Made by a program: the position numbers and the translations under genes
In this document: positions 8,123 to 59,940 of the stretch, one piece after another
Numbering within the stretch: the stretch's first letter is position 1
Layout of the letters: each line of letters starts with the position of its first letter
Source: Scyliorhinus canicula
Lineage: Eukaryota
Assembly: GCF_902713615.1 (NCBI RefSeq)
Contig: NC_052151.1
Coordinates: 201,589,703-201,653,702, forward strand
Reading direction: 5' to 3'
Length of the DNA stretch: 64,000 bases
Notes under the pieces: model-generated
The model's input: the letters and a program-made list of their open reading frames with translations, nothing else
What the model was told of the DNA's origin: nothing
The model's database searches: none

Positions 8123-8248
8123 CTTCTATGTTTCCACGACCTGATTTCTGACATGTTTTCAAACGTAATGCGATGACGATGATGATAATGATGACGATGA
8201 CGGCAATGATGGGGACGATGATGGAGATGATGTTGAACCTAGCCTCTT
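8123..8248 (-). CDS. CD2/SLAM-family receptor copy A, transmembrane exon
   Basis: 126 nt, phase 1-1, tag acceptor and GTAATA donor. Encodes EEARFNIISIIVPIIAVIVIIIIIVIALRLKTCQKSGRGNIE. Homologous to 53390-53536 and lies in a duplicated block. Confidence 0.85.
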
Positions 8249-8357
8249 CTACATGTACAAGACAGGAAATAAAGAGAAGCAATTGCCAAACAGATTCCCA
8301 GTAGACAAGTTACAATATTACCTATAATTTTCTCAGGACCAATTGAAAAAAAAAATC

Positions 8358-8610
8358 TTTGGGGTCTTGGGGGTCACCGGCTGGGCCAGCATTAACAGGC
8401 CATCACAAAAGGCCCTTGACCGGGTAATTGAGAGTCAACCACATTGCTGTGAGTCTGGAGTCACATGTAGGCCAGATGGTAGGAATGGCAGATTTCCTTC
8501 CCTAAAGTACATTAGTGAACCAGATGGGTTTTTACCACAATCGGCAATGGTTTCATGGTCACCATTTGACTTTTCATTACAGATTTTTATTGAATTTTAA
8601 TTTCATCTGC
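8358..8610 (-). mobile_element. SacSINE1-like SINE fragment
   Basis: Similar to 7255-7627 (gagtcaaccacattgctgtg...catttagtgaaccagatggg type core). Confidence 0.7.
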
Positions 8611-9520
8611 CATAAGAATATAAGAACATAAGAACTAGGAGCAGGAGTAGGCCATCTGGCCCCTCGAGCCTGCTCCGCCATTCAATGAGAGCATGGCTGA
8701 TCTTTTGTGGACTCAGCTCCACTTTCCGGCCCGAACACCATAACCCTTAATCCCTTTATTCTTCAAAAAAACTATCTATCTATCTTAAAAACATTTAATA
8801 AAGGAGCCTCAACTGCTTCACTGGGCAAGGAATTCCAGAGATTCACAACCCTTTGGGTGAAGAAGTTCCTCCTAAACTCAGTCCTAAATCTATTTTCCCT
8901 TATTTTGAGGCTGTGTCCCCCTAGTTCTGCTTTCACCCGCCAGTGGAAACAACTTGCCCGCATCTATCCTATCTATTCCCTTCATAATTTTATATGTTTC
9001 CAAAAGATCCCCCCTCATCCTTCTAAATTCCAACGAGTACAGTCCCAGTCTAATCAACCTCTCCTCATAATCCAACCCCTTCAGCTCTGGGATTAACCTA
9101 GTGAATTTCCTCTGCACACCCTCCAGTGCCTGTACGTCCTTTCTCAGGTAAGGAGACCAAAACTGAACACAATACTCCAGGTGTGGCCTCACTAACACCT
9201 TATACAATTTCAGCATAACCTCCCTAGTCTTAAACTCCATCCCTCTACCAATGAGGGACAAAATTCCATTCGCCTTCTTAATCACCTGTTGCACCTATAA
9301 ACCAACGTTTTGTGACTCATGCGCTAGCACACCCAGGTCTCTCTGCACAGCGGCACGTTTTAATATTTTATCATTTATATAATAATCCCTTTTGCTGTTA
9401 TTCCTTAAAAAATGGATAACCTCACATTTGTCAACATTGTATTCCATCTGCCAGACCCCAGCCCATTCACTTTACCTATCCAAATCCCTCTGCAGACTTC
9501 AAGTATCCCCTGTACATTTT
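8611..9520 (-). mobile_element. CR1 LINE 3' fragment
   Basis: ORF2 C-terminus VLVRPHLEYCVQFWSPYLRKD...LGLYSLEFRRMRGDL and a (ttcttat)n 3' tail. Confidence 0.92.
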
Positions 9521-9949
9521 GCTTTGTGGGATTTGAACCTGGGTTCTCGGAGCAATGCCCTGGATCTCTCGTTTACTATTCCAGTGACAATACCACAAGA
9601 CCACAACCTCCCATCAATGGGGTAGAGGAGCACACAGTTCATTGTCTGTAGAAGGGTGATATGGACTTGAAATTATAACTCAGTTTCTCTCTCCACAGAT
9701 GTTGCCAGAGCAGACGGGTTTATCCAGCAGTTTGATTTAATTTCTGATTTCCAGCATCCCAAAGTATTTTGCTTTTATTGACAATGGTAAATATCTTGTT
9801 GATTGAGGCGGTTTGATTACTGATGCACAGATCACTAAAGGTGGTGACACAGGTTACTGAGGGTGTAAGTCAGCAGCAAAGCTTGTCCTGGGCTCCTTTC
9901 TACAGCGTTCAAATTGAAAGGCAGACAATTTAGGTGAAACTTGTATTAA

Positions 9950-11370
9950 ACTTTGGTTACACCACACTAGGTGCACTGTGCACAGTTCTGGTCTCCATAT
10001 CCCTCGGTTAGATCATACTGGGAGCACTGTGCACAGTTCTGGTCTCCATATCCTTTGGCTGGTTCCCACTTGGAGCACTGTGCACAGTTCTGGTCTCCAT
10101 ATCCCTCGGTTAGACCACACTGGGAGCACTGTGCACAGTTCTGGTCTCCATATCCCTCGGTTAGACCACACTGGGAGCACTGTGCACAGTTCTGGTCTCC
10201 ATATCCCTCGGTTAGACCACACTTCAGAGCACTGTGCACAGTTCTGGTCTCCATACCCCTCGGTTAGACCACACTGGGAGCACTGTGCACAGTTCTGGTC
10301 TCCATATCCCTCGGTTAGACCACATTGGGAGCACTGTGCTTAGTTCTGGTCTCCATATCCCTCAGTTAGACCACACTGGGAGCACTGTGCATAGTTCTGG
10401 TCTCCAAAGGGCAGCACGGTAGCATTGTGGATAGCACAATCGCTTCACAGCTCCAGGGTCCGAGGTTCGATTCCGGCTTGGGTCACTGTCTGTGTGGAGT
10501 CTGCACATCCTCCCCGTGTGTGCATGGGAGACCACACTGGGAGCACTGTGCACAGTTCTGGTCTCCATATCCCTCGGTTAGGTCACACTGGGAGCACTGT
10601 GCACAGTTCTGGTCTCCATATCCCTCGGTTAGACCACACTGGGAGCACTGTGCACAGTTCTGGTCTCCATATCCCTCGGTTAGACCACACTGGGAGCACT
10701 GTGCACAGTTCTGGTCTCCATATCCCTCGGTTAGACCACACTGGGAGCACTGTACTCAGTTCTGGTCTCCATATCCCTCGGTTAGACCACATTGGGAGCA
10801 CTGTGCTTAGTTCTGGTCTCCATATCCCTCAGTTAGACCACACTGGGAGCACTGTGCATAGTTCTGGTCTCCAAAGGGCAGCACGGTAGCATTGTGGATA
10901 GCACAATCGCTTCACAGCTCCAGGGTCCCAGGTTCGATTCCGGCTTGGGTCACTGTCTGTGTGGAGTCTGCACATCCTCCCCGTGTGTGCATGGGAGACC
11001 ACACTGGGAGCACTGTGCACAGTTCTGGTCTCCATATCCCTCGGTTAGGTCACACTGGGAGCACTGTGCACAGTTCTGGTCTCCATATCCCTCGGTTAGA
11101 CCACACTGGGAGCACTGTGCACAGTTCTGGTCTCCATATCCCTCGGTTAGACCACACTGGGAGCACTGTGCACAGTTCTGGTCTCCATATCCCTCGGTTA
11201 GACCACACTGGGAGCAATGTGCACAGTTCTGGTCTCCATATCCCTCAGTTAGACCACACTGGGAGCACTGTGCACAGTTCTGGTCTCCATATCCCTCGGT
11301 TAGACCACACTTGAGAGCACTGTACCCAGTTCTGATCTCCATATCCCTCGGTTACACCACACTTTGGAGA
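9950..11370 (+). repeat. 51-bp minisatellite derived from CR1 ORF2, with two embedded SINE heads
   Basis: Unit tgcacagttctggtctccatatccctcggttagaccacactgggagcactg. SINE heads at about 10406-10525 and 10873-10992 are offset by 467 bp. Confidence 0.95.
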
Positions 11371-13420: not shown

Positions 13421-13479
13421 TGCCCTTAAGAAAAAATTAATCTACTCCATTATTTTACCATAATCCATGTACCTAGCCA

Positions 13480-14300: not shown

Positions 14301-14859
14301 AAGAACCCTACCGTGAACCACAATTACCTCTGCAATTCTTGAAACAATTCACTTGTAAATGTAGTGTTGTTACCTGACACAAGTGAATCTGGTAGACCAT
14401 GAACCAGATTTCTTCTGGTTGAAGAAATTTAACGCAGCTTCTCAATTGTTACAGGAATTGCAATATTATTCTGTGATGAGAGCTTCCAACCATTTCAAGT
14501 CTGCGTCTACGGCAACCAAAAACATGTGGTTCGTAAAAGGTCCCACAAAGCACGCACAAAGTCAGGACCACAGCCTATCAGGCCACTACCAAGGATGGAC
14601 GGGCCATCTTCTGGTTCATCTGACATGCTGAACAGGATTTCAGATTGCTCTCCAAGTCCAGGTCCATATTAGGCCACCAAATAGACGACCTGGCTAAACT
14701 TTCCATTCTGGAAGCACTAAGATGAGCCTGATTAATTTCCGACATGACCTGCGAATGAGCAGGGGGCGAACGACTATCCGCGACTCCGTAGTATGCATCC
14801 ACCCTGCACACTTAACACACCCTGCCCTTCACACAGGGTTTCAACTCATCATCTTCTAA

Positions 14860-24502: not shown

Positions 24503-24715
24503 CTCTGCACCATTTAATTGTGAGATTCTGTGATCTCCTCACTGTTCGTCTTCCAATCTTGAAAAGCTGGACAAAATAACACCTTCAACATTAACCATTC
24601 CAGGGGTAACAGCCCGGTCTCTTGAAGCTGAACCCTTGGGTTCCCGCAGTTATCTCTCAGTCCACTCCATTCCCTACTCCAGCTTCCCCCTGTCAGATAC
24701 AAGGTTGACACTGAC

Positions 24716-25006
24716 CTTCCTGAGTGTGTTGACATGGTTTATCTTTACTGAACACTGTGCTCTCCTCACTGACAGGGTTCTGGGCTGTGCACAGGTAGTT
24801 GATGGAGTCGGAACTTCCCACCGACAATTCCAACTGCTCCATATTCCTGGAGACAGGCTGAATGGAATCATTCCTGTCAAAGTATCCAACTGGAGACCAG
24901 CTATAGAGGACACGATCTCCCCTCTCCACAGAGCAGCGCAGGGTCACCATACAGGGCTGACCAATGGTGGTGTTGACCAACTCCACTCGAGGCTTGGATA
25001 CAGGCT
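24716..25006 (-). CDS. CD2/SLAM-family receptor copy A, IgC2 exon
   Basis: Acceptor ctttgttcacacag, donor GTCAGT, 291 nt, phase 1-1. EPVSKP...CMVTLRC...YSW...YLCTAQNPVS...KPC has four Cys and the PVSKP and CxAxNPVS motifs of the SLAM C2 domain. Confidence 0.93.
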
Positions 25007-25064
25007 CTGTGTGAACAAAGAGAGGCTGTGAGTGAGTGTGGATCGGAAAAGCTCCTGGCCTGGA

Positions 25065-25228
25065 CTCTCCCCTCTGAGAGAGACGGGACCCTGAGACTCC
25101 TGTCTCCAGACCCTCCCCTCGGTGGGAGACGGGACGGAGAGACTCCTGTCCCCAGACTCTCCCCTCGGTGGGAGACGGGACGGAGAGACTCCTGTCCCCA
25201 GACTCTCCCCTCGGTGGGAGACAGGACC
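25065..25228. repeat. 46-bp VNTR in the IgV-IgC2 intron of copy A (about 3.5 units)
   Basis: Unit gagactcctgtccccagactctcccctcggtgggagacgggacgga. Confidence 0.9.
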
Positions 25229-25264
25229 GAGTAACTCTCTCAATTGAAACTGCAAAATACTCAC

Positions 25265-25594
25265 CATAAACCTGGAGAGAAAGTTGTTTTTTATGAACAC
25301 TTGATGCCACCACGGACACAGTGTAAATCCCTTCATCGATTCTTTCGAGTGCATTTATCTGAAGTGTAAAATTCACAAACATTTGGACTCTTCCTGCGAA
25401 TCTGCTTGGAAAGATCTTTGTTCTGTCAGTGCTGGTGTCATATCGGATGACAACGATTTCAGAGCTTCCTGTGAATCTCCAGATGATTTCTGCACCGTTT
25501 GGGATTGGGTCAATTTCCACAGGTAACCACACAGAATGTCCCAGGCTCCCATTCACTGGATAATCTGGAGTTATAACATTCACTTCACCAAGAC
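25265..25594 (-). CDS. CD2/SLAM-family receptor copy A, IgV exon
   Basis: Acceptor ttttccatttgaag, donor GTGAGT, 330 nt, phase 1-1. Encodes LGEVNVITPDY...IIWRF...FTLQINALERIDEGIYTVSV...LSLQVY: a V-set fold with the C-strand Trp and DxGxY motif but no Cys, typical of CD2/SLAM N-terminal domains. Confidence 0.92.
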
Positions 25595-25767
25595 CTTCAA
25601 ATGGAAAACATGAAACATACTTTTACTGTCAATCTCTCCCACACACACAAAATCATTTAGATTAGGTCTGTGTCTCTGTCATTGAAACTTGGGGAACATC
25701 ACAGATAACGGAGCAGTGATTGAAAAGGCAGCAATTGGAGACAATTCTCCAGAGATCAGCAGCTGAG

Positions 25768-28700
25768 ACAGAGGGTCAGTACTGAGGCAGTGCTGCACTG
25801 TCAGAGGGTCAGTACTGAGGGAGTGCTGCACTGTCAGAGGGTCAGTACTGAGGGAGCGCGGAACTGTCAGAGGGTCAGTAATGAGGGAGGGCTGCACTGA
25901 CAGAGGGTCAGTACTGAGGGAGAGCTGCACTGTCAGAGGGTCAGTACTGAGGGAGCGCTGCACTGTCAGAGGGTCAGTACTGAGGGAGCGCTGCACTGTC
26001 AGAGGGTCAGTACTGAGGGAGTGCTGCACTGTCAGATGGTCAGTACTGAGGGAGTGCCGCACTGTCAGAGGGTCAGTACTGAGGGAGGGCTGCACTTTCA
26101 GAGGGTTAGTACTGAGGGAGTGCTGCACTGTCAGAGGGTCAGTACTGAGGGAGGGCTGCACTGTCAGAGGGTCAGTACTGAGGGAGCGCTGCACTGTCAG
26201 AGGGTCAGTACTGAGGGAGTGCTGCACTGTCAAAGGGTCAGTACTGAGGGAGTGCTGCACTGTCAGAGGGTCAGTACTGAGGGAGTGCTGCATTGTCAGA
26301 GGGTCAGTGCTGAGGGAGTGCCACTCTGTCAGAGGGTCAGTACTGAGGGAGCGCTGCACTGTCAGAGGGTCAGAACTGAGGGAGTGCTGTACTGTGAGAG
26401 GGTGAGTACTGAGGGACTGCTGCACTGTCAGAGGGTCAGTACTGAGGGAGTGCTGCACTGTCAGAGGGTCAGTACTGAGGGAGTGCGGCACTGTCAGACG
26501 GTCAGTACTGAGGGAGTGCTGCACTGTCAGAGGGTCAGTACTCACGGAGTGCTGCACTGTCAGAGGGTCAGTACTGAGGGAGTGCTGCACTGTCAGAGGG
26601 TCAGTACTGAGGGAGTGCTGCACTGTCAGAGGGTCAATACTGAGGGAGTGCTGCACTGTCAGAGGGTCAGTACTGACGGAGCGCTGCACTGTCAGAGGGT
26701 CAGTACTGAGGGAGTGCTGCACTGTCAGAGGGTCAGTACTGAGAGAGCGCTGCACTGTCAGAGGGTCAGTACTGAGGGAGTGCTGCACTGTCAGAGGGTC
26801 AGTACTGAGGGAGTGCTGCACTGTCAGAGTGTCAGTACTGAGGGAGTGCTGCACTGTCAGAGGGTCAGTACTGAGGGAGTGCTGCACTGTCAGAGGGTCA
26901 GTACTGAGGGAGTGCTGCACTGTCAGAGGGTCAGTACTGAGGGAGCGCGGAACTGTCAGAGGGTCAGTACTGAGGGAGGGCTGCACTGACAGAGGGTCAG
27001 TATTGAGGGAGTGCTACACTGTCAGAGGGTCAGTACTGAGGGAGCGCTGCACTGTCAAAGGGTCAGTACTGAGGGAGTGCCGCACTGTCAGAGGTCAGTA
27101 CTGAGGGAGGGCTGCACTGTCAGAGGGTTAGTACTGAGGGAGTGCTGCACTGTCAGAGGGTCAGTACTGAGGGAGGGCTGCACTGTCAGAGGGTCAGTAC
27201 TGAGGGAGCGCTGCACTGTCAGAGGGTCAGTACTGAGGGAGTGCTGCACTGTCAAAGGGTCAGTACTGAGGGAGTGCTGCACTGTCAGAGGGTCAGTACT
27301 GAGGGAGTGCTGCACTGTCAGAGGGTCAGTGCTGAGGGAGTGCCATTCTGTCAGAGGGTCAGTACTGAGGGAGCGCTGCACTGTCAGAGGGTCAGTACTG
27401 AGGGAGTGCTGTACTGTGAGAGGGTCAGTACTGAGGGACTGCTGCACTGTCAGAGGGTCAGTACTGAGGGAGTGCTGCACTGTCAGAGGGTCAGTACTGA
27501 GGGAGTGCGGCACTGTCAGAGGGTCAGTACTGAGGGAGTGCTGCACTGTCAGAGGGTCAGTACTCACGGAGTGCTGCACTGTCAGAGGGTCAGTACTGAG
27601 GGAGTGCTGCACTGTCAGAGGGTCAGTACTGAGGGAGTGCTGCACTGTCAGAGGGTCAGTACTGAGGGAGTGCTGCACTGTCAGGGAGTCAGTACTGAGG
27701 GAGTGCTGCACTGTCAGAGGGTCAGTACTGAGGGAGTGCTGCACTGTCAGAGGGTCAGTACTGAGGGAGTGCTGCACTGTCAGAGGGTCAGTACTGAGGG
27801 AGTGCTGCACTGTCAGAGGGTCAGTACTGAGGGAGCTGCACTGTCAGAGGGTCAGTACTGAGCGAGTGCTGCACTCTCAGAGGGTCAGTACTGAGCGAGT
27901 CCTGCACTGTCAGAGGGTCAGTACTGAGGGAGCGCTGCACTGTCAGAGGGTCAGTACTGAGGGAGCTGCACTGTCAGAGGGTCGGTACTGAGGGAGTGCT
28001 GCACTGTCAGAGGGTCAGTACTGAGGGAGAGCTGCACTGTCAGAGGGTCAGTACTGAGGGAGTGCTGCACTGTCAGAGGGTCAGTACTGAGGGAGTGCTG
28101 CACTGTCAGAGGGTCAGTACTGAGAGAGTGCTGCACTGTCAGAGGGTCAGTACTGAGCGAGTCCTGCACTGTCAGAGGGTCAGTACTGAGGGAGCGCTGC
28201 ACGGTCAGAGGGTCAGTACTGAGCGAGTGCTGCTCTGTCAGAGGGTCAGTACTGAGGGAGTGCTACACTGTCAGGGTCAGTACTGAGGGAGTGCTGCACT
28301 GTCAGAGGGTCGGTACTGAGGGAGTGCTTCACTGTCAGAGGGTCAGTACTGAGGGAGTGCTGCACTGTCAGAGGGTCAGTACTGAGCGAGTGCTGCACTC
28401 TCAGAGGGTCAGTACTGAACGAGTCCTGCACTGTCAGACGGTCAGTACTGAGGGAGCGCTGCACGGTCAGAGGGTCAGTACTGAGCGAGTGCTGCTCTGT
28501 CAGAGGGTCAGTACTGAGGGAGCGCTGCACGGTCAGAGGGTCAGTACTGAGGGAGTGCTGCACTGTCAGAGAGTCAGCACTGAGGGAGTGCTGCACTGTC
28601 AGAGGGTTAGAAATGAGGGAGTGCTGCACTGTCAGAGGGTCAGTACTGAGTGAGTGCTGCACTGTCAGAGGGTTAGAACTGAGGGAGTGCTGCACTGTCA

Positions 28701-31700
28701 GAGGGTCAGTACTGAGTGAGTGCTGCACTGTCAGAGGGTCAGTACTGAGTGAGTGCTGCACTGTCAGAGGGTCAGTACTGAGGGAGTGCTACACTGTCAG
28801 GGTCAGTACTGAGGGAGTGCTGCACTGTCAGAGGGTCGGTACTGAGGGAGTGCTGCACTGTCAGAGAGTCAGTACTGAGGGAGTGCTGCACTGTCAGAGG
28901 GTCAGTACTGAGCGAGTGCTGCACTCTCAGAGGGTCAGTACTGAGCGAGTCCTGCACAGTCAGAGGGTCAGTACTGAGGGAGCGCTGCACGGTCAGAGGG
29001 TCAGTACTGAGCGAGTGCTGCTCTGTCAGAGGGTCAGTACTGAGGGAGCTGCACTGTCAGAGGGTCAGTACTGAGGGAGGGCTGCACTGTCAGAGGGTCA
29101 GTACTGAGGGAGCGCTGCACTGTCAGAGGGTCAGTACTGAGGGAGTGCTGCACTGTCAAAGGGTCAGTACTGAGGGAGTGCTGCACTGTCAGAGGGTCAG
29201 TACTGAGGGAGTGCTGCACTGTCAGAGGGTCAGTGCTGAGGGAGTGCCATTCTGTCAGAGGGTCAGTACTGAGGGAGCGCTGCACTGTCAGAGGGTCAGT
29301 ACTGAGGGAGTGCTGTACTGTGAGAGGGTCAGTACTGAGGGACTGCTGCACTGTCAGAGGGTCAGTACTGAGGGAGTGCTGCACTGTCAGAGGGTCAGTA
29401 CTGAGGGAGTGCGGCACTGTCAGAGGGTCAGTACTGAGGGAGTGCTGCACTGTCAGAGGGTCAGTACTCACGGAGTGCTGCACTGTCAGAGGGTCAGTAC
29501 TGAGGGAGTGCTGCACTGTCAGAGGGTCAGTACTGAGGGAGTGCTGCACTGTCAGAGGGTCAGTACTGAGGGAGTGCTGCACTGTCAGGGAGTCAGTACT
29601 GAGGGAGTGCTGCACTGTCAGAGGGTCAGTACTGAGGGAGTGCTGCACTGTCAGAGGGTCAGTACTGAGGGAGTGCTGCACTGTCAGAGGGTCAGTACTG
29701 AGGGAGTGCTGCACTGTCAGAGGGTCAGTACTGAGGGAGCTGCACTGTCAGAGGGTCAGTACTGAGCGAGTGCTGCACTCTCAGAGGGTCAGTACTGAGC
29801 GAGTCCTGCACTGTCAGAGGGTCAGTACTGAGGGAGCGCTGCACTGTCAGAGGGTCAGTACTGAGGGAGCTGCACTGTCAGAGGGTCGGTACTGAGGGAG
29901 TGCTGCACTGTCAGAGGGTCAGTACTGAGGGAGAGCTGCACTGTCAGAGGGTCAGTACTGAGGGAGTGCTGCACTGTCAGAGGGTCAGTACTGAGGGAGT
30001 GCTGCACTGTCAGAGGGTCAGTACTGAGAGAGTGCTGCACTGTCAGAGGGTCAGTACTGAGCGAGTCCTGCACTGTCAGAGGGTCAGTACTGAGGGAGCG
30101 CTGCACGGTCAGAGGGTCAGTACTGAGCGAGTGCTGCTCTGTCAGAGGGTCAGTACTGAGGGAGTGCTACACTGTCAGGGTCAGTACTGAGGGAGTGCTG
30201 CACTGTCAGAGGGTCGGTACTGAGGGAGTGCTTCACTGTCAGAGGGTCAGTACTGAGGGAGTGCTGCACTGTCAGAGGGTCAGTACTGAGCGAGTGCTGC
30301 ACTCTCAGAGGGTCAGTACTGAACGAGTCCTGCACTGTCAGACGGTCAGTACTGAGGGAGCGCTGCACGGTCAGAGGGTCAGTACTGAGCGAGTGCTGCT
30401 CTGTCAGAGGGTCAGTACTGAGGGAGCGCTGCACGGTCAGAGGGTCAGTACTGAGGGAGTGCTGCACTGTCAGAGAGTCAGCACTGAGGGAGTGCTGCAC
30501 TGTCAGAGGGTTAGAAATGAGGGAGTGCTACACTGTCAGGGTCAGTACTGAGGGAGTGCTGCACTGTCAGAGGGTCAGTACTGAGGGAGCGCGGAACTGT
30601 CAGAGGGTCAGTACTGAGGGAGGGCTGCACTGACAGAGGGTCAGTACTGAGGGAGTGCTGCACTGTCAGAGGGTCAGTACTGAGGGAGTGCTGCACTGTC
30701 AAAGGGTCAGTACTGAGGGAGTGCTGCACTGTCAGAGGGTCAGTACTGAGGGAGTGCTGCACTGTCAGAGGGTCAGTGCTGAGGGAGTGCCACTCTGTTA
30801 GAGGGTCAGTACTGAGGGAGCGCTGCACTGTCAGATGGTCAGTACTGAGGGAGTGCTGTATTGTGAGAGGTTCAGTATTGAGGGAGTGCTGCACTGTCAG
30901 AGGGTCAGTACTGAGGGAGTGCGGCACTGTCAGAGGGTCAGTACTGAGGGAGTGCTGCACTGTCAGAGGGTCCGTACTGAGGGAGTGCCGCACTGTCAGA
31001 GGGTCAGTACTGAGGGAGTGCTGCACTTTCAGATGGTCAGTACTGAGGGAGTGCTGCACTGTCAGAGGGTCAGTACTGAGGGAGTGCTGCAATGTCAGAG
31101 GGTCAGTACTGAGGGAGCGCTGCACTGTCAGAGGGTCAGTACTGAGGGAGTGCTGCACTGTCAGAGGGTCAGTACTGAGGGAGCGCTGCACTGTCAGAGG
31201 GTCAGTACTGAGGGAGTGCCGCACTGTCAGAGGGTCAGTACTGAGGGAGTGCTGCACTGTCAGAGGGTCAGTACTGAGCGAGTGCTGCACTGTCAGAGGG
31301 TCAGTACTGAGGGAGTGCTGCACTGTCAGAGGGTCAGTACTGAGGGAGTGCTGCACTGTCAGAGGGTCAGTACTGAGCGAGTGCTGCACTCTCAGAGGGT
31401 CAGTACTGAGCGAGTCCTGCACTGTCAGAGGGTCAGTACTGAGGGAGCGCTGCTCTGTCAGAGGGTCAGTACTGAGGGAGCTGCACTGTCAGAGGGTCGG
31501 TACTGAGGGAGTGCTGCACTGTCAGAGGGTCAGTACTGAGGGAGTGCTGCACTCTCAGAGGGTCAGTACTGAGCGAGTCCTGCACTGTCAGAGGGTCAGT
31601 ACTGAGGGAGCGCTGCACGGTCAGAGGGTCAGTACTGAGCGAGTGCTGCTCTGTCAGAGGGTCAGTACTGAGGGAGTGCTACACTGTCAGGGTCAGTACT

Positions 31701-32668
31701 GAGGGAGTGCTGCACTGTCAGAGGGTCGGTACTGAGCGAGTGCTGCACTCTCAGAGGGTCAGTACTGAGCGAGTGCTGCTCTGTCAGAGGGTCAGTACTG
31801 AGGGAGCGCTGCACGGTCAGAGGGTCAGTACTGAGGGAGTGCTGCACTGTCAGAGAGTCAGCACTGAGGGAGTGCTGCACTGTAAGAGGGTTAGAAATAA
31901 GGGAGTGCTGCACTGTCAGAGGGTCAGTACTGAGTGAGTGCTGCACTGTCAGAGGGTTAGAACTGAGGGAGTGCTGCACTGTCAGAGGGTCAGTACTGAG
32001 TGAGTGCTGCACTGTCAGAGGGTCAGTACTGAGGGCGTGCTACACTGTCAGGGTCAGTACTGAGGGAGTGCTGCACTGTCAGAGGGTCGGTACTGAGGGA
32101 GTGCTGCACTGTCAGAGAGTCAGTACTGAGGGAGTGCTGCACTGTCAGAGGGTCAGTACTGAGCAAGTGCTGCACTCTCAGAGGGTCAGTACTGAGCGAG
32201 TCCTGCACTGTCAGAGGGTCAGTACTGAGGGAGCGCTGCACGGTCAGAGGGTCAGTACTGAGCGAGTGCTGCTCTGTCAGAGGGTCAGTACTGAGGGAGC
32301 GCTGCACGGTCAGAGGGTCAGTACTGAGGGAGTGCTGCACTGTCTGAGAGTCAGCACTGAGGGAGTGCTGCACTGTCAGAGGGTCAGTATTGAGGGAGTG
32401 CTGCACTGTCAGAGGGTCAGTACTGAGGGTGTGCTGCACTGTCAGAGGGTCAGTACTGAGGGAGTGCTGCACTGTCAGAGGGTCAGTACTGAGGGAGTGT
32501 GGCACTGTCAGAGGGTCAGTACTGAGGGAGTGCTGCACTGTCAGAGGGTCAGTGCTGAGGGAGTGCTGCACTGTCAGAGGGTCAGTGCTGAGGGAGTGCT
32601 GCACTGTCAGAGGGTCAGTACTGAGGGAGCGCTGCACTGTCAGAGGGTCAGTACTGAGTGAGTGCTGC
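25768..32668. repeat. 6.9-kb 33-bp satellite in intron 1 of copy A
   Basis: Unit actgagggagtgctgcactgtcagagggtcagt; contains higher-order duplications. Confidence 0.98.
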
Positions 32669-32862
32669 CCTGTCATTAGCAGTCTCCATGCTGCTAAGTG
32701 GATGTGGAACAATCCCTGGGACTGTTTGAAGGAAGTGCTCCGGATTCATCCCCAGCGAATACTCCATGAACGTCACTTACAATGACAGACTACTGGTTAG
32801 CACCTTAGTACATTGTGGGATCTTTTGTGTACAATGTTGCTGAGATTTCCAGAGCTACAGAG

Positions 32863-36611: not shown

Positions 36612-36669
36612 CGGCAGACAGAAGAGGAAGCAGGAGGAAAACCCGGGCTCTGAGACAACAAGCTGCCAT
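36612..36669 (-). CDS. CD2/SLAM-family receptor copy A, exon 1 (signal peptide)
   Basis: ATG at 36669 reads MAACCLRARVFLLLPLLSA-G then a GTAAGA donor (phase 1). It joins the IgV exon in frame to give ...LLSAGLGEVNVIT, a hydrophobic leader. The link spans an 11-kb intron and is inferred. Confidence 0.75.
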
Positions 36670-51580: not shown

Positions 51581-53389
51581 AGTTCTTTACGAGACAGAGG
51601 GTCTTTTCGCAGCATGACTGAGCGCAGACTCTGACGGTCTGCGAAAATGTGCTTATCAGATCAATTCACAAGCACTCCGCTTTTCTTACTGTCACGGTTA
51701 ATATATGACTTTAAATTTTATTTGACATGATTTCTCTCAATAATTTCTTCATTTAAACCTTTTTCTCTCTTTTCCGCCTTGCGGGGTGGGGGTGGGGGGG
51801 GGGATGGGGATGGGGGGTGGTGCCATTGACTTCATCCAGTTGCCTTCTCTCATTCCCTGTGTCAAGGTCCAGCATGGAGCGGGGAGATTCCATTGGGAGT
51901 CTATTTCGGAATACTGTCCAGCTGAGGTCAAGGCCTGGGAGCAATAGTGGGAGGAGGTAGGGGGAGGGGGGGAGGAAGAGACAGGAATCTTGCTGTGCCT
52001 GCGAGGATCAGCACCACACCAGGATAACTTGGTACAGACCCTGGGAGGGGGTAAGAGGGGTGTAAACCAGGCTCCTCTGTCAGTAATGGTGGGGGTGGAG
52101 GGGTGGGTTTATGAGAGTTAATTAGGAGGTTTGAGGGCAGTGAGAGATGCAGATGTTGGGTGTGGGATTGGAACAGGGAGTGACGAAGGGAGATGACATG
52201 AGAAGGGGCCACCAGCGGCTAACAGGAAATCTTCACTGGCAGATTGGTCAGACTGGGAGTCCCACCGCGTAGACCCGTCTCTGAACGTCTTGGTCCCAGG
52301 GCTGCCGAGGAGGGCCCTCTTTTCCTTCCACTTTTCGGAAGATGACCTTTGATCTTGGCAGCGAACGAGGCTGGAATGGGATCAACCTGCAAATGAAAGA
52401 TGGAGGTGTCGGTATATCAGCAACAAATGACATTTCCTGGAAGCACGTCAACAGTGACAGAGACAACAACATTTAAACACACTGCTGGCAATCAGGTCAA
52501 TATCAGATACGGACATTACAGTGGGAGGGAGCGGAGTGGTTCAGCAATATCGCTCCAGCATTGCAAAGGAACCTCCCACCTGTTCACATTACCATGCTCA
52601 GTGGGGTCTGGAACTAACAACTCCACCTGTCTTCCTCAAACATCCACTCCCTCCACCACCAACGCAGAGCCGTCACCAAAGACATCTCTGTGCAGCCGTG
52701 TGTACCACCCACAGGTCAAGGCTCCTTCGGCAGCACCTTCCCAACTCACGACTTCTACCATCCAGAAGGACAAGAGCAGCGATCCCTTCCAGTCAGGAAC
52801 ACTTCAGCAGTCCAGGCCGTTCCGCCTCCCATCTTTGGGTAAACATTCTCCAAGGCGCCCTTTGCGTCAACGCAGAATCTCCGAGCAGAAACCCGTAGCC
52901 AAGTTCCACACGCGTGAGGGCGGCCTCAACCGAGATCTCGGGGTCGCGTCACATTACATGTAACCCCCACCATACTACCCGGGTTGGAAGAATCCTACTA
53001 AGTGTCCTGGCTTGAGACAATTCACAGCTTGATTCCCTGCGATTATCCCTCACCCCACTCACACTATTCCTATAAAGATTTGCTCTTCACATTCCAATCT
53101 GTCATTATTTTGCAATTGTGTCTCTCCTGTATATTGCTGCGATTGTGAACCTGTCTCCACTTCGCCTGATGGAGGGGCGGCGCTCTGAAAGCTACTGATT
53201 TCAAATCAACCTGTTGGACTTTAACCGGGTGTGAGACTTCTTACCCAGCAAGGAAAAGCTGAGTTCAATGAGCGTGGCTCCGCCCACGAGCTGAATATAA
53301 TGCAAGATGGCCAAAGGTGACAGGTCGGATTATTACGTCCTGCGACCAATCCCCTCCACGTATTGCCTGAGATTAAGATGAACCATTAC

Positions 53390-53536
53390 CTTCTATGTTT
53401 CCATGACCAGATTTCTGACGTGACTTATGATATAAAACGATGATAATAATGATCATGATGGAGAAGATAATGATGATGCTGATTTTGACAATGATGGGGA
53501 TAATGTTGATCCTGGTCTTGAATAAATTATTTGAAT
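53390..53536 (-). CDS. CD2/SLAM-family receptor copy B, transmembrane exon
   Basis: Acceptor tttcctgtcttgcag, donor GTAATG, 147 nt, phase 1-1. Encodes DSNNLFKTRINIIPIIVKISIIIIFSIMIIIIIVLYHKSRQKSGHGNIE. Confidence 0.87.
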
Positions 53537-53591
53537 CTGCAAGACAGGAAACAAATAGACAAACGTGAGATCTATGGGCAATAAGTGGGGT

Positions 53592-53955
53592 AGAATCAAA
53601 AGAGTCATAGGATTTGCAGTGCTGAAGGAGGCCATTTGGCCCATCGAGTCTGCACCGGCCCTTGGAAAGAGCACCCCACCCAAGCCCACACCTCCATCCC
53701 ATCCCCACACCTACACCCTATCCCCGTAACCCCAACAAATCTTTTTTGGACACCAAGGGCAATTTATCATGGCCAATCCATCTAATCTGCACAGTTTTGG
53801 ACTGTGGAGGGGAAAGCGGAGCACCCGGAGGAAACCCACGCAGACACGGGGAGAACGTGCAGACTCCGCACAGACAGTGACCCAAGCCAGGAATCGAACC
53901 TGGGACCCTGGAGCTGTGAAGAAACTGTGCTAACCACTGTGCTACCGTGCTGCTG
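53592..53955 (-). mobile_element. V-SINE/HE1-like SINE
   Basis: Full head, V-domain and tail. Confidence 0.88.
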
Positions 53956-54869
53956 AGGAGCACACGCTTCATTTTCTGTGGAAGGGTGATTATGGACTCG
54001 AAACGTTAACTCAGTTTCCCTCTCCACAGATGTTGCCAGAGCAGACGGGTTTGTCCAACACTTTCAGTTTGTGGTTCTGATTTCCAGCACGCAAAGTATT
54101 TTGCTTTTATTGACAAGGGTAAATATCTTGTTGAGTGAGGCGGTTTTATTACTGATGCACAGATCACTAAAGGGGGTGACACAGGTTTACTGAGGGTGTA
54201 AGTCAGCAGCAAAGCTTGTCCTGGGCTCCTTTCTACAGGGGGCAAATTGAAAGGCCTACAATTTAGTTTAAACTTGTATTAAACTTCGGTGACACCACGC
54301 TTGGGAGCGCTGTGCGCAGTTGTGAGACGTGATTTAACCGGACAAAATCTATATCCGGTTCCGGGCACGTGTGGCGGGTGTTTCTCAGTGACTGCAGCGG
54401 CTGAGGAACAGCAGATATTTAACGACACTTTGCCATTTATTTTGGTCTCGGGAAGTTTCTGTCTGCCAAGACCGCACTAAAGAGCCATTTCTCGCTGGTG
54501 AGCCCAACAGGAAAGGCTCCTCGCAGATCGGGGCGCCATTTTCCCTGACTGCGCCGATCTTCCCCGCCCCCACCCACCTTTCAGCAACTCCCCCCCTCCC
54601 ACTTTGGACCTCCCCCCAATATCGAGGGAACAGAACCCCCGCCCCCCCCCCACCGCCCCCAGACCTGGTAAGGCCTCTCCAGGGTCCAATCCCTCGCAGT
54701 GTGAACTTGGCACCCGGCTATCCTGGTCCTGGCATCCTGGCAGTGACTCTGCCCGCCTGGCGGTGCCAGTGTTCCAGAGGGAGTTCCAAGGTGCCACCCT
54801 GCTCTGTCCTCTATCACCTGGGGGTCTGCAATGGCCTGTGGGATCCCCACCCCGAGGTGCCATAAGGCC

Positions 54870-55352: not shown

Positions 55353-55506
55353 CCAAGGGCAGCACGGTAGCATTGTGGATAGCACAATCGCTTCACAGCT
55401 CCAGGGTCCCAGGTTCGATTCCGGCTTGGGTCACTGTCTGTGCGGAGTCTGCACATCCTCCCCGTGTGTGCGTGGGTTTCCTCCGGGTGCTCCAGTTTCC
55501 TCCCAC

Positions 55507-56432
55507 TATGCACAGTTCTGGTCTCCATATCCCTCGGTTAGACCACACTGGGAGCACTGTGCACAGTTCTGGTCTCCATATCCCTCGGTTAGACCACACT
55601 TGGAGCACTGTGCACAGTTCTGGTCTCCATAATCCCTCAGTTAGACCACACTGGGAGCACTGTGCACATTTCTGGTCTCCATATCCCTCGGTTAGACCAC
55701 ACTTGGAGCACTGTGCACAGTTCTGGTCTCCATATCCCTCGGTTAGACCACATTTGGAGCACTGTGCACAATTCTGGTCTCCATATCCCTCGGTTAGACC
55801 ACACTTGGAGCACTGTGCACAGTTCTGGTCTCCATATCCCTCGGTTAGACCACATTGGGAGCACTGTGCACAGTTCTGGTCTCCATATCCCTCGGTTAGA
55901 CCACACTGGGAGCACTGTGCACAATTCTGGTCTCCATATCCCTCGGTTAGACCACACTTGGAGCACTGTGCACAGTTCTGGTCTCCATATCCCTCGGTTA
56001 GACCACATTTGGAGCACTGTGCACAATTCTGGTCTCCATATCCTCGGCTAGACCACATTTGGAGCACTGTGCACAATTCTGGTCTCCATATCCCTCGGTT
56101 AGACCATACTGGGAGCACTGTGCACAATTCTGGTCTCCATATCCCTCGGTCAGACCACACTGGGAGCACTGTGCACAGTTCTGGTCTCCATATCCCTCGG
56201 TTAGACCACACTGGGAGCACTGTGCACAGTTCTGGTCTCCATATCCCTCGGTTAGACCACGCTTGGAGCACTGTGCACAGTTCTGGTCTCCATATCCCTC
56301 GGTTAGACCACACTGGGAGCACTGTGCACAGTTCTGGTCTCCATATCCCTCGGTTAGACCACGCTTGGAGCACTGTGCACAGTTCTGGTCTCCATATCCC
56401 TCGGTTAGACCACGCTTGGAGCACTGTGCACA
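55507..56432 (+). repeat. 51-bp CR1-derived minisatellite (copy B), preceded by a SINE head at 55357-55506
   Basis: Same unit as 9950-11370. Confidence 0.95.
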
Positions 56433-56534
56433 GACTCAATCATGGAGCTTTTAAAAAAAAAATTCTTTAAAGGCACCAGTGAATGAGGAGAATAGATTTA
56501 CACAGAACAAATAGCCATGATCCTTTCTTCAGAA

Positions 56535-57500: not shown

Positions 57501-58690
57501 CTAGGCTTGTGGGATCAGACCCAATCACCGCCTGTTACCGAGCAGAGCACAGCCTTTGGGCTAATTCATTAGCCAGCAGCCAATCAATCAAACCGAGTCC
57601 TCACTGATCTCCCTGACATTGGTCAAGCTCCTGTTTAAACCAGCACAACCTTCCGGATACTTCTGTTTGAATTAAAGGTACAGGCTTCTTGCATTAAAGT
57701 CGCAGGTCCATTAATCATCCATGGATCAAAAGTGAAACAGTAAAATAAAAGAAAGGGGAAATAAAGGAAGGAACAAGAAGGAGCCTTACATGTGAGATTT
57801 TTGATGTGAGACACAATGAGCGACTGGGCTCTGGAATATTCTGCCTTGAAGTGTGGTGGAGACAGGTTTAATCGAGGGCATTGGACGATTATCTTCAGAG
57901 AAACAATTAAGTCATGATGCTCGTTTGGAGAGCTGGTGCAGAGATGAAGGGCAGAATGGCCTCCTGATAGCTATGAAATCCTTTCAGCACAGAAGCAGGC
58001 CATTCAGCCCATCGTGTGTGCTTGACCGACCCCAGAGAGGAGCCCACCAAGGCCACACCCCGTCCTATCCCGTAACCCTGCACATTGATCATGGCCAGTC
58101 TACCTCTGCTGCGCATCTCTGGACAGTGAATCATAGAACAGAATGACTATAGCGCAGGAGGCCATTTGGCCCATCGAGTCTGCACCAACCCTCTGAAAGC
58201 GCGCCCCATCTAGGCCCGCTCCCCTGCCCTATCCCCAGAACCCCAACCAACCTTTGGATGCTAAGGGGCAATTTAGCATGGCCAATCCACCTAATCTGCA
58301 GATCTGTGGACTGCGGGAGGAAACCGGAGCATCCGGAGGAAACCCACACAGACACGGGGAGATCGTGCAGACTCCACACAGACACACACACACACGCACA
58401 CACACAGGTGAGCCAAGGTGCAGATTGTATCTGGGTCCCTGGCACTGTGGGGCAGCAGTGCTAACCACTGTGCCACCCCTCTGCACCATTTAATTGTGAG
58501 ATTCCGTGATCTCCTCACTGTTCGTCTTCCAATCTTGAAAACCTGGACAAAATAACCCTTTAAATTTAACCATCCCAGGGGTAACAGCCCGGCCTATTGA
58601 AGCCGAGCCCTTGGGTCCCCACAGTTATCTCTCAGTCCACTCCATTCCCTACTCCAGCTTCCCCCTGTTAGATACAAGGTTGTCACTGAC

Positions 58691-58981
58691 CTTTCTGTGT
58701 ATGTTGACATGGTTTATCTTTACTGAACACTGTGCTCTCCTCGCTGACAGGGTTCTGGGCTGTGCACAGGTAGTTGATGGAGTTGGACATTCCCACCGAC
58801 ACTTCCAACTGCTCCATATTCCTGGAGACAGGCTGAATGGAATCATCCCAGTCAAAGTATCCAACTGGAGACCAGCTATAGAGGACACGATCTCCCCTCT
58901 CCACAGAGCAGCGCAGGGTCACCATACAGGGCTGACCAATGGTGGTGTTGACCAACTCCACTCGAGGCTTGGATATAGGCT
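58691..58981 (-). CDS. CD2/SLAM-family receptor copy B, IgC2 exon
   Basis: 291 nt, same splice sites, four Cys retained. 7 amino-acid differences over 97 positions versus copy A. Confidence 0.93.
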
Positions 58982-59029
58982 CTGTGTGAAAAAAGAGAGG
59001 CTGTGAGTGAGTGTGGATCGGAAAAGCTC

Positions 59030-59568
59030 CTGGCCTGGACTCTCCCCTCGGTGGGAGACGGGACCCTGAGACTCCTGTCCCCAGACTCTCCCCTCGGTGG
59101 GAGACGGGACGGAGAGACTCCTGTCCCCAGACTCTCCCCTCGGTGGGAGACGGGACGGAGAGGCTCCTGTCCCCAGACTCTCCCCTCGGTGGGAGACGGG
59201 ACGGAGAGGCTCCTGTCCCCAGACTCTCCCCTCGGTGGGAGACGGGACGGAGAGGCTCCTGTCCCCAGACTCTCCCCTCGGTTGGAGACGGGACGGAGAG
59301 ACTCCTGTCCCCAGACTCTCCCCTCGGTGGGAGACGGGACGGAGAGGCTCCTGTCCCCAGACTCTCCCCTCGGTGGGAGACGGGACGGAGAGGCTCCTGT
59401 CCCCAGACTCTCCCCTCGGTGGGAGACGGGACGGAGAGACTCCTGTCCCCAGACTCTCCCCTCGGTGGGAGACGGGACGGAGAGGCTCCTGTCCCCAGAC
59501 TCTCCCCTCGGTGGGAGACGGGACGGAGAGGCTCCTGTCCCCAGACTCTCCCCTCGGTGGGAGACGGG
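59030..59568. repeat. 46-bp VNTR in the IgV-IgC2 intron of copy B (about 12 units)
   Basis: Same unit as 25065-25228. Confidence 0.95.
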
Positions 59569-59610
59569 AAATAGTTACCCTTCTCTCAATTGAAACTGCA
59601 AAATACTCAC

Positions 59611-59940
59611 CATAAACCTGGAGAGAAAGGTGTTTTTTATCATCTCTTGATGTCACCACGGACACAGTGTAAATCCCTTCATCGATTCTTTCGAGTGCGT
59701 TTATCTGAAGCGTAAAATTCACAAACATTTGAACTCTTCCTGCGAATCTGCTTCGAAAGATCTTTGTTGTGTTAGTGCCGGTGTCATATCGGGCGATGCT
59801 GGTTTCAGGGCTTCCTGTGAATTTCCAGATGATTTCTGCATCGTTTGGGATTGGGTCAATTTCCACAGGTAACCACACAGAATGTCCCAGGCTCCCATTC
59901 ACTGGATAATCTGGAGTTATAACATTCACATCACCAAGAC
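59611..59940 (-). CDS. CD2/SLAM-family receptor copy B, IgV exon
   Basis: Same splice sites and 330-nt length as copy A. 17 amino-acid differences over 109 codons; frame open. Confidence 0.92.

What the first reader, a model, noticed from the sequence alone, without database searches (positions are those of the whole stretch)
8123..59940. Tandem pair of CD2/SLAM-family receptor genes hidden in repeats of a shark-type genome
Seen: two minus-strand exon sets (IgV 330 nt, IgC2 291 nt, TM), all phase 1 with GT-AG sites and open frames. Collinear intronic blocks support duplication: 8030-8330/53300-53590, 9660-9990/54000-54330, 23950-25760/57850-60110 and 33590-33890/63700-64000. Known: a Cys-less V domain plus a four-Cys C2 domain with PVSKP and CxAxNPVS defines CD2/SLAM receptors, which cluster and expand by lineage. 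Inference: part of a chondrichthyan-specific expansion that probably continues past the window. I cannot tell whether it is already annotated.
Basis: partly seen in the sequence, partly recalled or inferred. Interest (0 to 1): 0.8.

Follow-up and report, generated by a model that had tools for sequence, protein, structure and literature searches.

The report
Catshark SLAM-family receptor gene pair
The window holds two real, expressed, neighbouring immune-receptor genes of the SLAM/CD2 family in the small-spotted catshark; NCBI already annotates both under SLAM names, so the interest lies in their look as an inhibitory/activating receptor pair kept alike by gene conversion.

Summary
Two minus-strand genes each have a Cys-less IgV exon (330 nt), a four-Cys IgC2 exon (291 nt) and a TM exon, all phase 1 with AG/GT sites. 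The window is Scyliorhinus canicula. Spliced gene 1 exons equal the first 287 of 309 residues of XP_038656733.1 (SLAM-like isoform X1). Gene 2 exons match XP_038656738.1 (SLAM family member 5-like). So both genes are already annotated.

Contigs from four public runs skip the V-C2 intron and join leader to V and C2 to TM in gene 1. One run carries gene 2 letters and its V-C2 junction.

SLAM membership holds, by a modest margin. All four C2 cysteines align with human SLAMF6. Gene 1's tail has the motif TIYAVV, encoded outside the window. A shark-only profile scores bat CD84 above HEPACAM2. A tree puts CD84 with the shark proteins (97/94).

Ectodomains group by species while TM exons group by type. 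That fits a paired receptor homogenised by gene conversion, which is inference only.

The same scan flagged another SLAM/CD2 pair 184 kb beyond the window's end, on other DNA of this genome.

The parts
36612..36669 (-). Gene 1 leader exon, coding part: ATG at 36669, 19 codons plus 1 base, donor GT at 36611-36610.
   Evidence: Matches residues 1-19 of XP_038656733/4 at 100%. A contig loose end at 25595 maps to 36613 onward, which confirms the leader-to-V splice.
25265..25594 (-). Gene 1 IgV exon, 330 nt, phase 1, no Cys.
   Evidence: Pfam V-set E 1.4e-10. Splice sites read directly. A 2665-nt contig in run X26 covers it with 0 mismatches.
25007..25264 (-). Gene 1 intron 2, 258 nt, GT..AG. It is open in frame and holds about 3 copies of a 46-nt repeat.
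   Evidence: Skipped by contigs in all 4 runs laid. ORF 24693-25583 reads through it.
24716..25006 (-). Gene 1 IgC2 exon, 291 nt, phase 1, four Cys.
   Evidence: Pfam Ig_3/Ig_2 matches are below the curated cut-offs. All four Cys align with human SLAMF6. Contig joints and loose ends fall at both exon ends.
8123..8248 (-). Gene 1 TM exon, 126 nt, phase 1, with an uncharged Ile-rich TM. RefSeq isoform X2 skips it.
   Evidence: Hydrophobicity scan and sequence reading. The loose end at 24716 in runs X26, X15 and X1 equals window 8219-8248. The exon is present in the 309-aa isoform X1.
7826..7881 (-). Gene 1 first cytoplasmic exon, 56 nt (DSTPLDQRLPRAPTIPNNY). The next exon, which carries the ITSM TIYAVV, lies outside the window.
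   Evidence: tblastn 100%. Splice sites read. No match to the last 22 residues anywhere in the window.
59611..59940 (-). Gene 2 IgV exon, 330 nt, phase 1, no Cys.
   Evidence: Pfam V-set E 3.7e-11. Matches XP_038656738.1 at 100%. Contig record 8 of run X15 carries 17 of 17 gene 2-specific letters.
58691..58981 (-). Gene 2 IgC2 exon, 291 nt, phase 1, four Cys.
   Evidence: The X15 loose end at the V donor equals window 58966-58981, which confirms the gene 2 V-to-C2 splice.
53390..53536 (-). Gene 2 TM exon, 147 nt, phase 1, with a Lys inside the TM (IIPIIVKISIII), followed by a short basic stretch.
   Evidence: Matches the C-terminus of XP_038656738.1 at 100%. The S. torazame orthologue P0004 is 74% identical and keeps the Lys.
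52386..53210 (-). Region holding the two candidate starts of gene 2's last coding exon. An acceptor followed by GT TGA begins an exon at 53210 or at 52386. Which one is used is unresolved.
   Evidence: Pattern scan. The protein ends ...NIEG then stop, and reading through the donor would give a different end.
25769..32675 (.). 33-nt satellite, 210 copies, inside gene 1 intron 1. The same satellite sits in gene 2 intron 1 at 60114-63651.
   Evidence: Tandem Repeats Finder. blastn 25040-28378 / 59383-62728 at 92.3%.

Best explanation
The window holds a head-to-tail pair of expressed SLAM/CD2-family receptor genes of Scyliorhinus canicula on the minus strand. They arose by tandem duplication.

Gene 1 (XP_038656733.1, 309 aa) is a type I membrane protein. 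It has a Cys-less IgV domain, a two-disulfide IgC2 domain, an uncharged TM and a tail with a YxN motif and one ITSM (TIYAVV). By analogy with SLAM receptors, tyrosine phosphorylation of the ITSM would recruit SH2 adaptors or phosphatases of the SAP/EAT-2 or SHP/SHIP type after the V domain binds its ligand on another cell. This step is inferred.

Gene 2 (XP_038656738.1, 276 aa) has a nearly identical ectodomain. It carries a different TM exon with a lysine in the membrane and almost no tail. The most likely reading is an activating counterpart that signals through an acidic-TM ITAM adaptor of the DAP12 or FcR-gamma type. This step is also inferred.

The K-type and ITSM-type TM exons predate the S. 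canicula / S. torazame split. The leader-V-C2 part has been homogenised within each species, probably by gene conversion. The remaining differences between the two copies sit on the presumed ligand-binding face.
For: Identity and annotation:
- Exon-by-exon 100% matches to the RefSeq proteins. The spliced window exons equal the first 287 residues of isoform X1.

Expression and splicing:
- The intron 2 skip appears in contigs of 4 runs.
- Loose ends equal the leader exon and the TM exon of gene 1.
- Gene 2-specific letters and the gene 2 V-C2 junction appear in run X15.

Family:
- Pfam V-set.
- Single-sequence PDB search puts SLAMF6 first (5.5e-7) and CD48 second (5.2e-6), with all four C2 Cys aligned to SLAMF6.
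- Profile against PDB gives SLAMF6 1.4e-15 over both domains.
- Foldseek against PDB puts CD48/CD2 first, with CD2, CD58 and NTB-A among the best TM-scores.
- A shark-only HMM scores bat CD84 at 115 bits, HEPACAM2 at 75-93 and a CEACAM-like protein at 57.
- The ML tree has a 97/94 split.
- The ITSM T[IV]YA[VET]V is conserved in sharks and a skate.

Paired-receptor pattern:
- Within species the V domains are 85-92% identical and the C2 domains 93-100%. Between species they are 71-80%.
- The K-type TM exons are 74% identical between species but only 45-48% identical to the ITSM-type TM.
- The ectodomain tree groups by species, 100/97 and 100/99.
- Non-coding identity is 97% just upstream of the V exon and 95% before the C2 exon. 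It falls to about 72-75% around the TM exon.
- 15 of the 17 V-domain replacements lie from the C strand through the C''-D loop or in the F-G hairpin of the AF2 model.
Against: - The ectodomain alone does not separate SLAM from hepaCAM. Foldseek against Swiss-Prot models ranks hepaCAM first, and HEPACAM2 scores only 22-40 bits below CD84.
- The tree contains a single tetrapod SLAM protein on a long branch.
- The ITSM exon of gene 1 is not in the window. It is known only from the RefSeq model.
- No adaptor, SAP homologue or ligand was examined.
- The Lys could be incidental in a very Ile-rich TM.
- V-exon dN/dS is 1.43 but not significant (P about 0.19).
- The runs are labelled RNA only by guess, and tissues are unknown.
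- Gene 2's C2-to-TM junction and its last exon were not seen in reads.
Confidence: 0.8

Rival explanations
1. Gene 2 is not an activating receptor. It is a short-tailed, non-signalling family member: a ligand or decoy like CD48 or CD58, or a dominant-negative competitor for gene 1's ligand. The TM lysine has no adaptor role.
For: CD2/SLAM families regularly include tail-less members, and NCBI names several shark relatives 'CD48 antigen-like'. Other elasmobranch members have short tails without a charged TM, for example P0011, P0013, P0014 and P0021. No adaptor was tested.
Against: The Lys and its surrounding motif IIPIIVKISI are conserved between two Scyliorhinus species although the TM exon as a whole is only 74% identical. 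A skate relative (P0162) also has a Lys in its TM with a short tail. A basic TM residue with a short tail next to a motif-bearing twin is the standard signature of adaptor-coupled paired receptors (own knowledge). Xenopus CD2/SLAM genes with NxxR TMs are reported in PMC4536121.
Confidence: 0.3
2. The two genes belong to a hepaCAM- or CEACAM-like branch of V-C2 adhesion molecules, not to CD2/SLAM. The SLAM names would then be annotation by weak best hit.
For: Foldseek against Swiss-Prot models ranks hepaCAM first at 3e-15. NCBI names a few relatives HEPACAM-like, namely P0015 and P0017. HEPACAM2 scores 75-93 bits with the shark profile. The Cys-less V domain and the NPVS motif are shared with CEACAM and HEPACAM2.
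Against: In alignment A3 HEPACAM2 lacks the first of the four C2 cysteines, while all the shark proteins aligned there keep it. CD84 outscores every HEPACAM2 tested. The tree puts CD84 on the shark side of a 97/94 split. The best two-domain PDB match is SLAMF6. The tail is short with an ITSM, and two ITSMs in shark group B, as in SLAM receptors.
Confidence: 0.07
3. The similarity of the two ectodomains reflects a recent independent duplication in each Scyliorhinus species, with the 3' part then replaced. It would not reflect ongoing gene conversion of an old pair.
For: Only protein data are available for S. torazame. Within-species clustering is also what a recent duplication would give.
Against: Both species have the same two TM exon types. 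The K-type TM exons are 74% identical across species, against 45-48% identity to the ITSM-type TM. Independent origin would therefore need the same exon capture twice. Identity between the two copies in the window drops stepwise from 97% just upstream of the V exon to about 72-75% around the TM exon, as expected for a conversion tract inside an older duplication.
Confidence: 0.12

Closest known systems
Mammalian SLAM-family receptors (SLAMF5/CD84, SLAMF6/NTB-A, SLAMF1)
   Same: - Leader / V / C2 / TM / cytoplasmic exon plan.
- Cys-less V domain.
- C2 domain with four aligned Cys.
- TxYxxV/I switch motif in the tail.
- Tandem clustering.
- Best sequence matches.
   Different: - Only about 25% identity.
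- Gene 1 has one ITSM plus a YxN motif, where most mammalian members have two to four ITSMs.
- There is no one-to-one orthology with any of SLAMF1-9, and the NCBI names vary among relatives (SLAM, SLAMF5, 6, 8, 9, CD48, Ly-9).
- To my knowledge mammalian SLAM receptors have no member with a Lys in the TM.
Expanded CD2/SLAM family of Xenopus (Guselnikov et al. 2011, cited in PMC4536121)
   Same: A lineage-specific expansion of CD2/SLAM genes in which some members gained TM exons of the activating type with a basic residue.
   Different: The Xenopus TMs carry the NxxR motif linked to FcR-gamma. The catshark copy has a Lys in an Ile-rich TM without NxxR. I did not read the 2011 paper itself.
CEACAM1 / CEACAM3-type paired receptors (Kammerer and Zimmermann 2010, PMC2832619)
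   Same: A related V-C2 family in which an inhibitory-motif receptor and activating relatives keep closely related ligand-binding V domains through gene conversion, with diversifying selection on the binding face.
   Different: The activating CEACAMs carry their own ITAM-like tail rather than a charged TM. CEACAM C2 domains score lower here and lack the four-Cys pattern.
hepaCAM / HEPACAM2
   Same: Cys-less V domain plus C2 domain with an NPVS-type F strand. Top structural hit among Swiss-Prot models.
   Different: - HEPACAM2 has a second C2 domain.
- It lacks the first of the four C2 Cys.
- It has a long tail.
- It falls across a 97/94 split in the tree.

Membership tests
CD2/SLAM family | N-terminal V-set Ig domain without the canonical B-F disulfide | tested here: met
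   The 110-residue V exons of both genes contain no Cys. Pfam V-set E 1.4e-10 and 3.7e-11. The feature is shared with CEACAM and hepaCAM, so it is necessary but not sufficient.
CD2/SLAM family | Membrane-proximal C2-set domain with four conserved Cys (two disulfides) | tested here: met
   Four Cys in each C2 exon. All four align with the four Cys of human SLAMF6 (2if7). Three are invariant and the fourth is near-invariant across the 27 aligned relatives, and HEPACAM2 lacks the first.
CD2/SLAM family (SLAM subfamily) | Cytoplasmic ITSM, TxYxxV/I | tested here: met
   Gene 1: TIYAVV in XP_038656733/4. The motif is conserved as T[IV]YA[VET]V in shark and skate orthologues. The exon lies outside the window. 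Gene 2 has no ITSM, only a short tail.
CD2/SLAM family | Sequence closer to CD2/SLAM proteins than to other V-C2 Ig families | tested here: met
   PDB profile: SLAMF6 1.4e-15 over two domains against CEACAM at about 6e-12. Shark-only HMM: CD84 115 bits, HEPACAM2 75-93, CEACAM-like 57. Tree split 97/94. The margin is modest and only one tetrapod SLAM sequence was available.
CD2/SLAM family | Genes lie in a cluster of family members | tested here: met
   The tandem pair lies in this window. A Ly-9-like paralogue XP_038656735.1 sits on the same 226-Mb chromosome with an adjacent accession number. A third V variant appears in RNA contigs. The wider map and any MHC linkage (PMC10751288) were not testable.
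CD2/SLAM family | V domain binds homophilically or to another family member; ITSM binds SAP/EAT-2 | not testable with these tools
   No usable computational result was obtained. This needs binding assays.
Paired activating/inhibitory receptors | Two neighbouring genes with near-identical ectodomains, one with a tyrosine motif tail and the other with a basic TM residue and short tail | tested here: met
   The V domains are 85% identical and the C2 domains 93%. Gene 1 has an ITSM tail. Gene 2 has a Lys in the TM and about 15 cytoplasmic residues.
Paired activating/inhibitory receptors | The basic-TM member associates with an ITAM adaptor | not testable with these tools
   Catshark DAP12 and FcR-gamma were not examined. 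This needs co-expression and co-precipitation.
hepaCAM family | C2 domain with a single disulfide, long proline-rich tail (hepaCAM) or V-C2-C2 ectodomain (HEPACAM2) | tested here: not met
   The catshark proteins have a four-Cys C2, a single C2 domain and a short tail. HEPACAM2 lies across a 97/94 split. The hepaCAM features themselves are recalled from memory, except for what alignment A3 shows for HEPACAM2.

The most novel reading that the evidence does not exclude
The two genes form an ancient paired receptor system inside the SLAM family. One is an ITSM 'switch' receptor. The other is a Lys-TM partner that signals through a DAP12/FcR-gamma-type adaptor. Their ligand-binding ectodomains are kept alike by gene conversion while the binding face diverges, possibly under pathogen pressure. 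If so, paired-receptor evolution in the CD2/SLAM lineage would reach back to elasmobranchs, with a Lys-type TM unlike the NxxR type reported for Xenopus.
Probability: 0.4. Interest if true: 0.55.

Novelty: already known. Interest (0 to 1): 0.3.

Why it matters
As a gene discovery it adds little. Both genes are RefSeq models with SLAM names, and slamf genes in elasmobranchs are mentioned in the literature (PMC10751288, PMC10529500).

What may be worth a specialist's time is the pattern the annotation does not state. There is an ITSM-tailed copy and a Lys-TM short-tailed copy. Both are conserved in two catshark species. Their ectodomains are homogenised within species, and the remaining differences sit on the presumed binding face. 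That gives a concrete, testable case for how early activating/inhibitory pairing and concerted evolution arose in the SLAM/CD2 lineage.

Tried and rejected
- Complex prediction on two copies of the gene 1 V domain gave no verdict. The score was 0.40 against 0.50 for a control. It counts neither for nor against homophilic binding.
- The search of protein representatives returned mostly giant multi-Ig proteins whose summed scores swamp the list. It did not help classification. Ten single-pass hits that I named were all elasmobranch SLAM/CD48/Ly-9-like.
- The third homologous-protein search, with an alignment that included one HEPACAM2, was flooded by HEPACAM2 orthologues. It yielded no further tetrapod SLAM sequences. 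The tree therefore has only one mammalian SLAM protein.
- Foldseek against Swiss-Prot models could not separate hepaCAM from SLAM.
- The look-up of encoding contigs returned no DNA and no neighbours for gene 2, and had no record for isoform X2 of gene 1.
- The last exon of gene 2 could not be fixed. Two acceptors fit.
- V-exon dN/dS above 1 is not significant.
- Literature searches for shark SLAM, for paired SLAM receptors and for shark DAP12 found only passing mentions.
- The pseudogene reading is rejected: the frames are open, the RefSeq matches are exact, and spliced contigs exist.


Full report
**What is there.**
On the minus strand the window carries two sets of Ig-receptor exons. I read the splice sites base by base.
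- Gene 1: leader 36669-36612, IgV 25594-25265 (330 nt), IgC2 25006-24716 (291 nt), TM 8248-8123 (126 nt), first cytoplasmic exon 7881-7826 (56 nt).
- Gene 2: IgV 59940-59611 (330 nt), IgC2 58981-58691 (291 nt), TM 53536-53390 (147 nt).

All V, C2 and TM exons are phase 1, open, and flanked by AG and GT. The V exons contain no cysteine and the C2 exons contain four. The window has no N.

**The duplication.**
- 33622-33827 / 63715-63920: 95.7%.
- 25040-28378 / 59383-62728: 92.3%.
- 23977-25231 / 57908-59206: 85%.
- 9625-9987 / 53955-54321: 88.9%.
- 8030-8152 / 53303-53419: 78.9%.

The introns are mostly repeats.
- A 33-nt satellite sits in intron 1: 210 copies in gene 1, and 60114-63651 in gene 2.
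- A 51-nt satellite sits in intron 3 of both genes.
- A 46-nt minisatellite sits in intron 2: about 3 copies in gene 1 and 11.6 in gene 2.
- LTR-retroelement fragments are scattered through the introns and the intergenic region.

**Identity and annotation.**
A protein search returned exact matches from Scyliorhinus canicula on a 226-Mb chromosome of GCA_902713615.2.
- The spliced gene 1 exons equal the first 287 residues of XP_038656733.1, 'signaling lymphocytic activation molecule-like isoform X1', 309 aa.
- Isoform X2 (XP_038656734.1, 267 aa) skips the TM exon.
- The gene 2 exons match XP_038656738.1, 'SLAM family member 5-like', 276 aa.

The last 22 residues of gene 1, including the ITSM TIYAVV, are not encoded anywhere in the window. 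Gene 2's leader lies beyond position 64000. Gene 2 spans 13,847 bp in the record. Its final exon contributes two bases of a Gly codon and the stop. It could start at 53210 or at 52386, and I could not decide between them.

**Expression.**
I laid contigs of four public runs on 24600-25700.
- All four skip exactly 25007-25264, with GT..AG on the minus strand.
- Intron 2 has no depth apart from a 76-nt repeat piece, and the flanks beyond the two exons have none.
- One 2665-nt contig matches both exons without a mismatch.
- The loose ends at the C2 donor equal window 8219-8248, the start of gene 1's TM exon.
- The loose ends at the V acceptor equal 36613 onward, the leader exon.

So the leader-V, V-C2 and C2-TM junctions of gene 1 are all seen, and the TM-containing isoform is expressed.

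In run X15 one contig carries 17 of 17 gene 2-specific V letters. Another ends in the first 16 bases of gene 2's C2 exon. Gene 2 is therefore transcribed and spliced as well. Some contigs carry letters of neither gene, which points to a third paralogue or an allele.

Two caveats apply. The runs are RNA only by guess, although the missing introns argue for RNA. Tissues are coded and unknown.

**Family.**
Sequence searches:
- Pfam finds V-set for both V exons. It finds only sub-threshold Ig matches for the C2 exons.
- A single-sequence PDB search puts SLAMF6 first (5.5e-7) and CD48 second (5.2e-6). All four C2 cysteines align with those of SLAMF6.
- A six-sequence profile matches SLAMF6 over both domains at 1.4e-15. 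CEACAMs come in at about 6e-12, CD48 at 2e-9 and CD2 at 1e-7.

Structure searches used an AF2 model of the gene 2 ectodomain (pLDDT 86.5).
- Against PDB it hits the CD48/CD2 chimera first, with CD2, CD58, CEACAM1 and NTB-A among the best TM-scores.
- Against Swiss-Prot models hepaCAM ranks first, just ahead of SLAMF8, SLAM and SLAMF5. Fold alone therefore does not decide.

- A profile built only from shark and ray sequences scores a mammalian CD84 at 115 bits over V plus C2. That protein's cluster is named SLAM family member 5 of Pteropus.
- The same profile scores eleven HEPACAM2 orthologues at 75-93 bits and a CEACAM-like protein at 57 bits.
- An ML tree places HEPACAM2 and the CEACAM-like protein on one side of a 97/94 split. 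Both shark clades and CD84 fall on the other side.

The cytoplasmic motif T[IV]YA[VET]V is conserved in orthologues from sharks and a skate. A second shark clade has two ITSMs. HEPACAM2 lacks the first of the four C2 cysteines.

I conclude that the genes are CD2/SLAM-family members. The margin is modest, and only one tetrapod SLAM sequence was available.

**The pair.**
Gene 1's TM is uncharged and is followed by the ITSM tail. Gene 2's TM exon is different. It encodes a lysine within the membrane span (IIPIIVKISIII) and about 15 cytoplasmic residues.

S. torazame has the same two forms: P0003 with an ITSM tail and P0004 with a Lys TM. Identities by segment:
- V domains: 85-92% within species, 71-76% between species.
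- C2 domains: 93-100% within species, 79-80% between species.
- K-type TM exons: 74% between species, but only 45-48% to the ITSM-type TM.

The ectodomain tree groups the two S. canicula copies (100/97) and the two S. torazame copies (100/99). Within the window, non-coding identity between the copies is 97% just upstream of the V exon and 95% before the C2 exon. It is 83% after the C2 exon and about 72-75% around the TM exon.

The simplest reading is an old duplication with two TM types, whose leader-V-C2 part is homogenised by gene conversion.

Of the 17 amino-acid differences in the V domain, 15 lie from the C strand through the C''-D loop or in the F-G hairpin of the model. That region corresponds to the face that binds ligand in CD2/SLAM proteins (own knowledge). 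V-exon dN/dS is 1.43 and C2-exon dN/dS is 0.74, but the V-exon excess is not significant (P about 0.19).

**Mechanism.**
Shown: the gene structures, transcription and splicing, the domain family and the motifs.

Inferred from what is established for SLAM receptors and for paired receptors:
- Gene 1 signals through its phosphorylated ITSM by recruiting SAP/EAT-2-type adaptors or SHP/SHIP phosphatases. Its NNYEN motif may recruit Grb2.
- Gene 2 pairs through its lysine with an acidic-TM ITAM adaptor and acts as the activating twin.

None of this could be tested here. The homodimer prediction gave no verdict.

**Comparison and novelty.**
The closest known systems are these.
- Mammalian SLAMF receptors share the architecture and the ITSM.
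- The expanded Xenopus CD2/SLAM family has members with activating-type NxxR TMs (cited in PMC4536121).
- CEACAM1/CEACAM3-type pairs are kept alike by gene conversion (PMC2832619).

Elasmobranch slamf genes are mentioned as lying on the MHC chromosome (PMC10751288). Slamf6 is used as a marker in nurse shark T cells (PMC10529500).

The pair as such is therefore already known as annotated gene models. The Lys-TM/ITSM pairing with concerted evolution is, as far as my searches reached, not described for sharks. It would be a new member of a known kind of system.

**Extent of the expansion.**
The family is large in elasmobranchs. A profile search found 431 representative clusters at E of 1e-30 or better, though many are multi-Ig proteins. 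All ten that I named are shark or ray proteins called SLAM, CD48 or Ly-9-like, apart from one 'uncharacterized protein' of Mobula. No chimaera sequence was seen.

In S. canicula a Ly-9-like paralogue lies on the same chromosome and has an adjacent accession number. Scan note s1-286317 reports another SLAM/CD2 pair 184 kb beyond the window end, which I did not test.

Noticed in passing
window 25769-32675 and 60114-63651: A 33-nt satellite (210 and about 107 copies, 91-92% matches) fills intron 1 of both genes. It is open in several frames on both strands and yields spurious ORFs of up to 565 aa, such as repeats of SLSTDPLTVQH.
   Followed up: partly
window 9955-11363 and 55504-56433: A 51-nt satellite (27 and 18 copies) lies in intron 3 of both genes at collinear positions. 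In gene 1 it also shows a 467-nt higher-order period.
   Followed up: no
window 25007-25264 vs 58982-59610: Intron 2 holds a 46-nt minisatellite, about 3 copies in gene 1 and 11.6 in gene 2. In gene 1 the whole intron is open in the exon frame, so retaining the intron would add 86 residues without a stop.
   Followed up: partly
window 24600-25700 (runs X15 and X1): Some RNA-type contigs carry V- and C2-exon letters that belong to neither gene 1 nor gene 2, for example 25483 A>C, 25493 C>A, 25505 T>A, 25511 C>G and 24810 G>A. This suggests a third close paralogue or a divergent allele outside the window.
   Followed up: partly
window 8123-8248 (RefSeq isoform X2): RefSeq isoform X2 of gene 1 skips the TM exon in frame. 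That predicts a secreted protein which still carries the cytoplasmic tail with its ITSM. The contigs I laid showed the TM-containing junction. The skipping junction was not seen.
   Followed up: partly
window 38767-39213, 17297-17656, 14578-14811: LTR-retrotransposon fragments: RT RNase H-like domains (E 6e-17; a second match at E 2e-5 is below Pfam's cut-off) and an integrase zinc-binding domain (E 2e-10). They lie in the intergenic region and in gene 1 intron 3.
   Followed up: partly
window 37584-38290: A 35/72-nt C-rich repeat gives a 333-aa proline-rich ORF on the plus strand, about 0.9-1.6 kb upstream of gene 1's ATG. It looks like a repeat artefact rather than a gene.
   Followed up: no
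P0162 (Leucoraja), P0011, P0013 and P0014 (carpet sharks): Other elasmobranch family members also swap signalling modules. A skate 'CD48-like' protein has a Lys in its TM and a short tail. Orectolobiform genes or isoforms use an alternative TM (SVLQICLGG...) without an ITSM.
   Followed up: no
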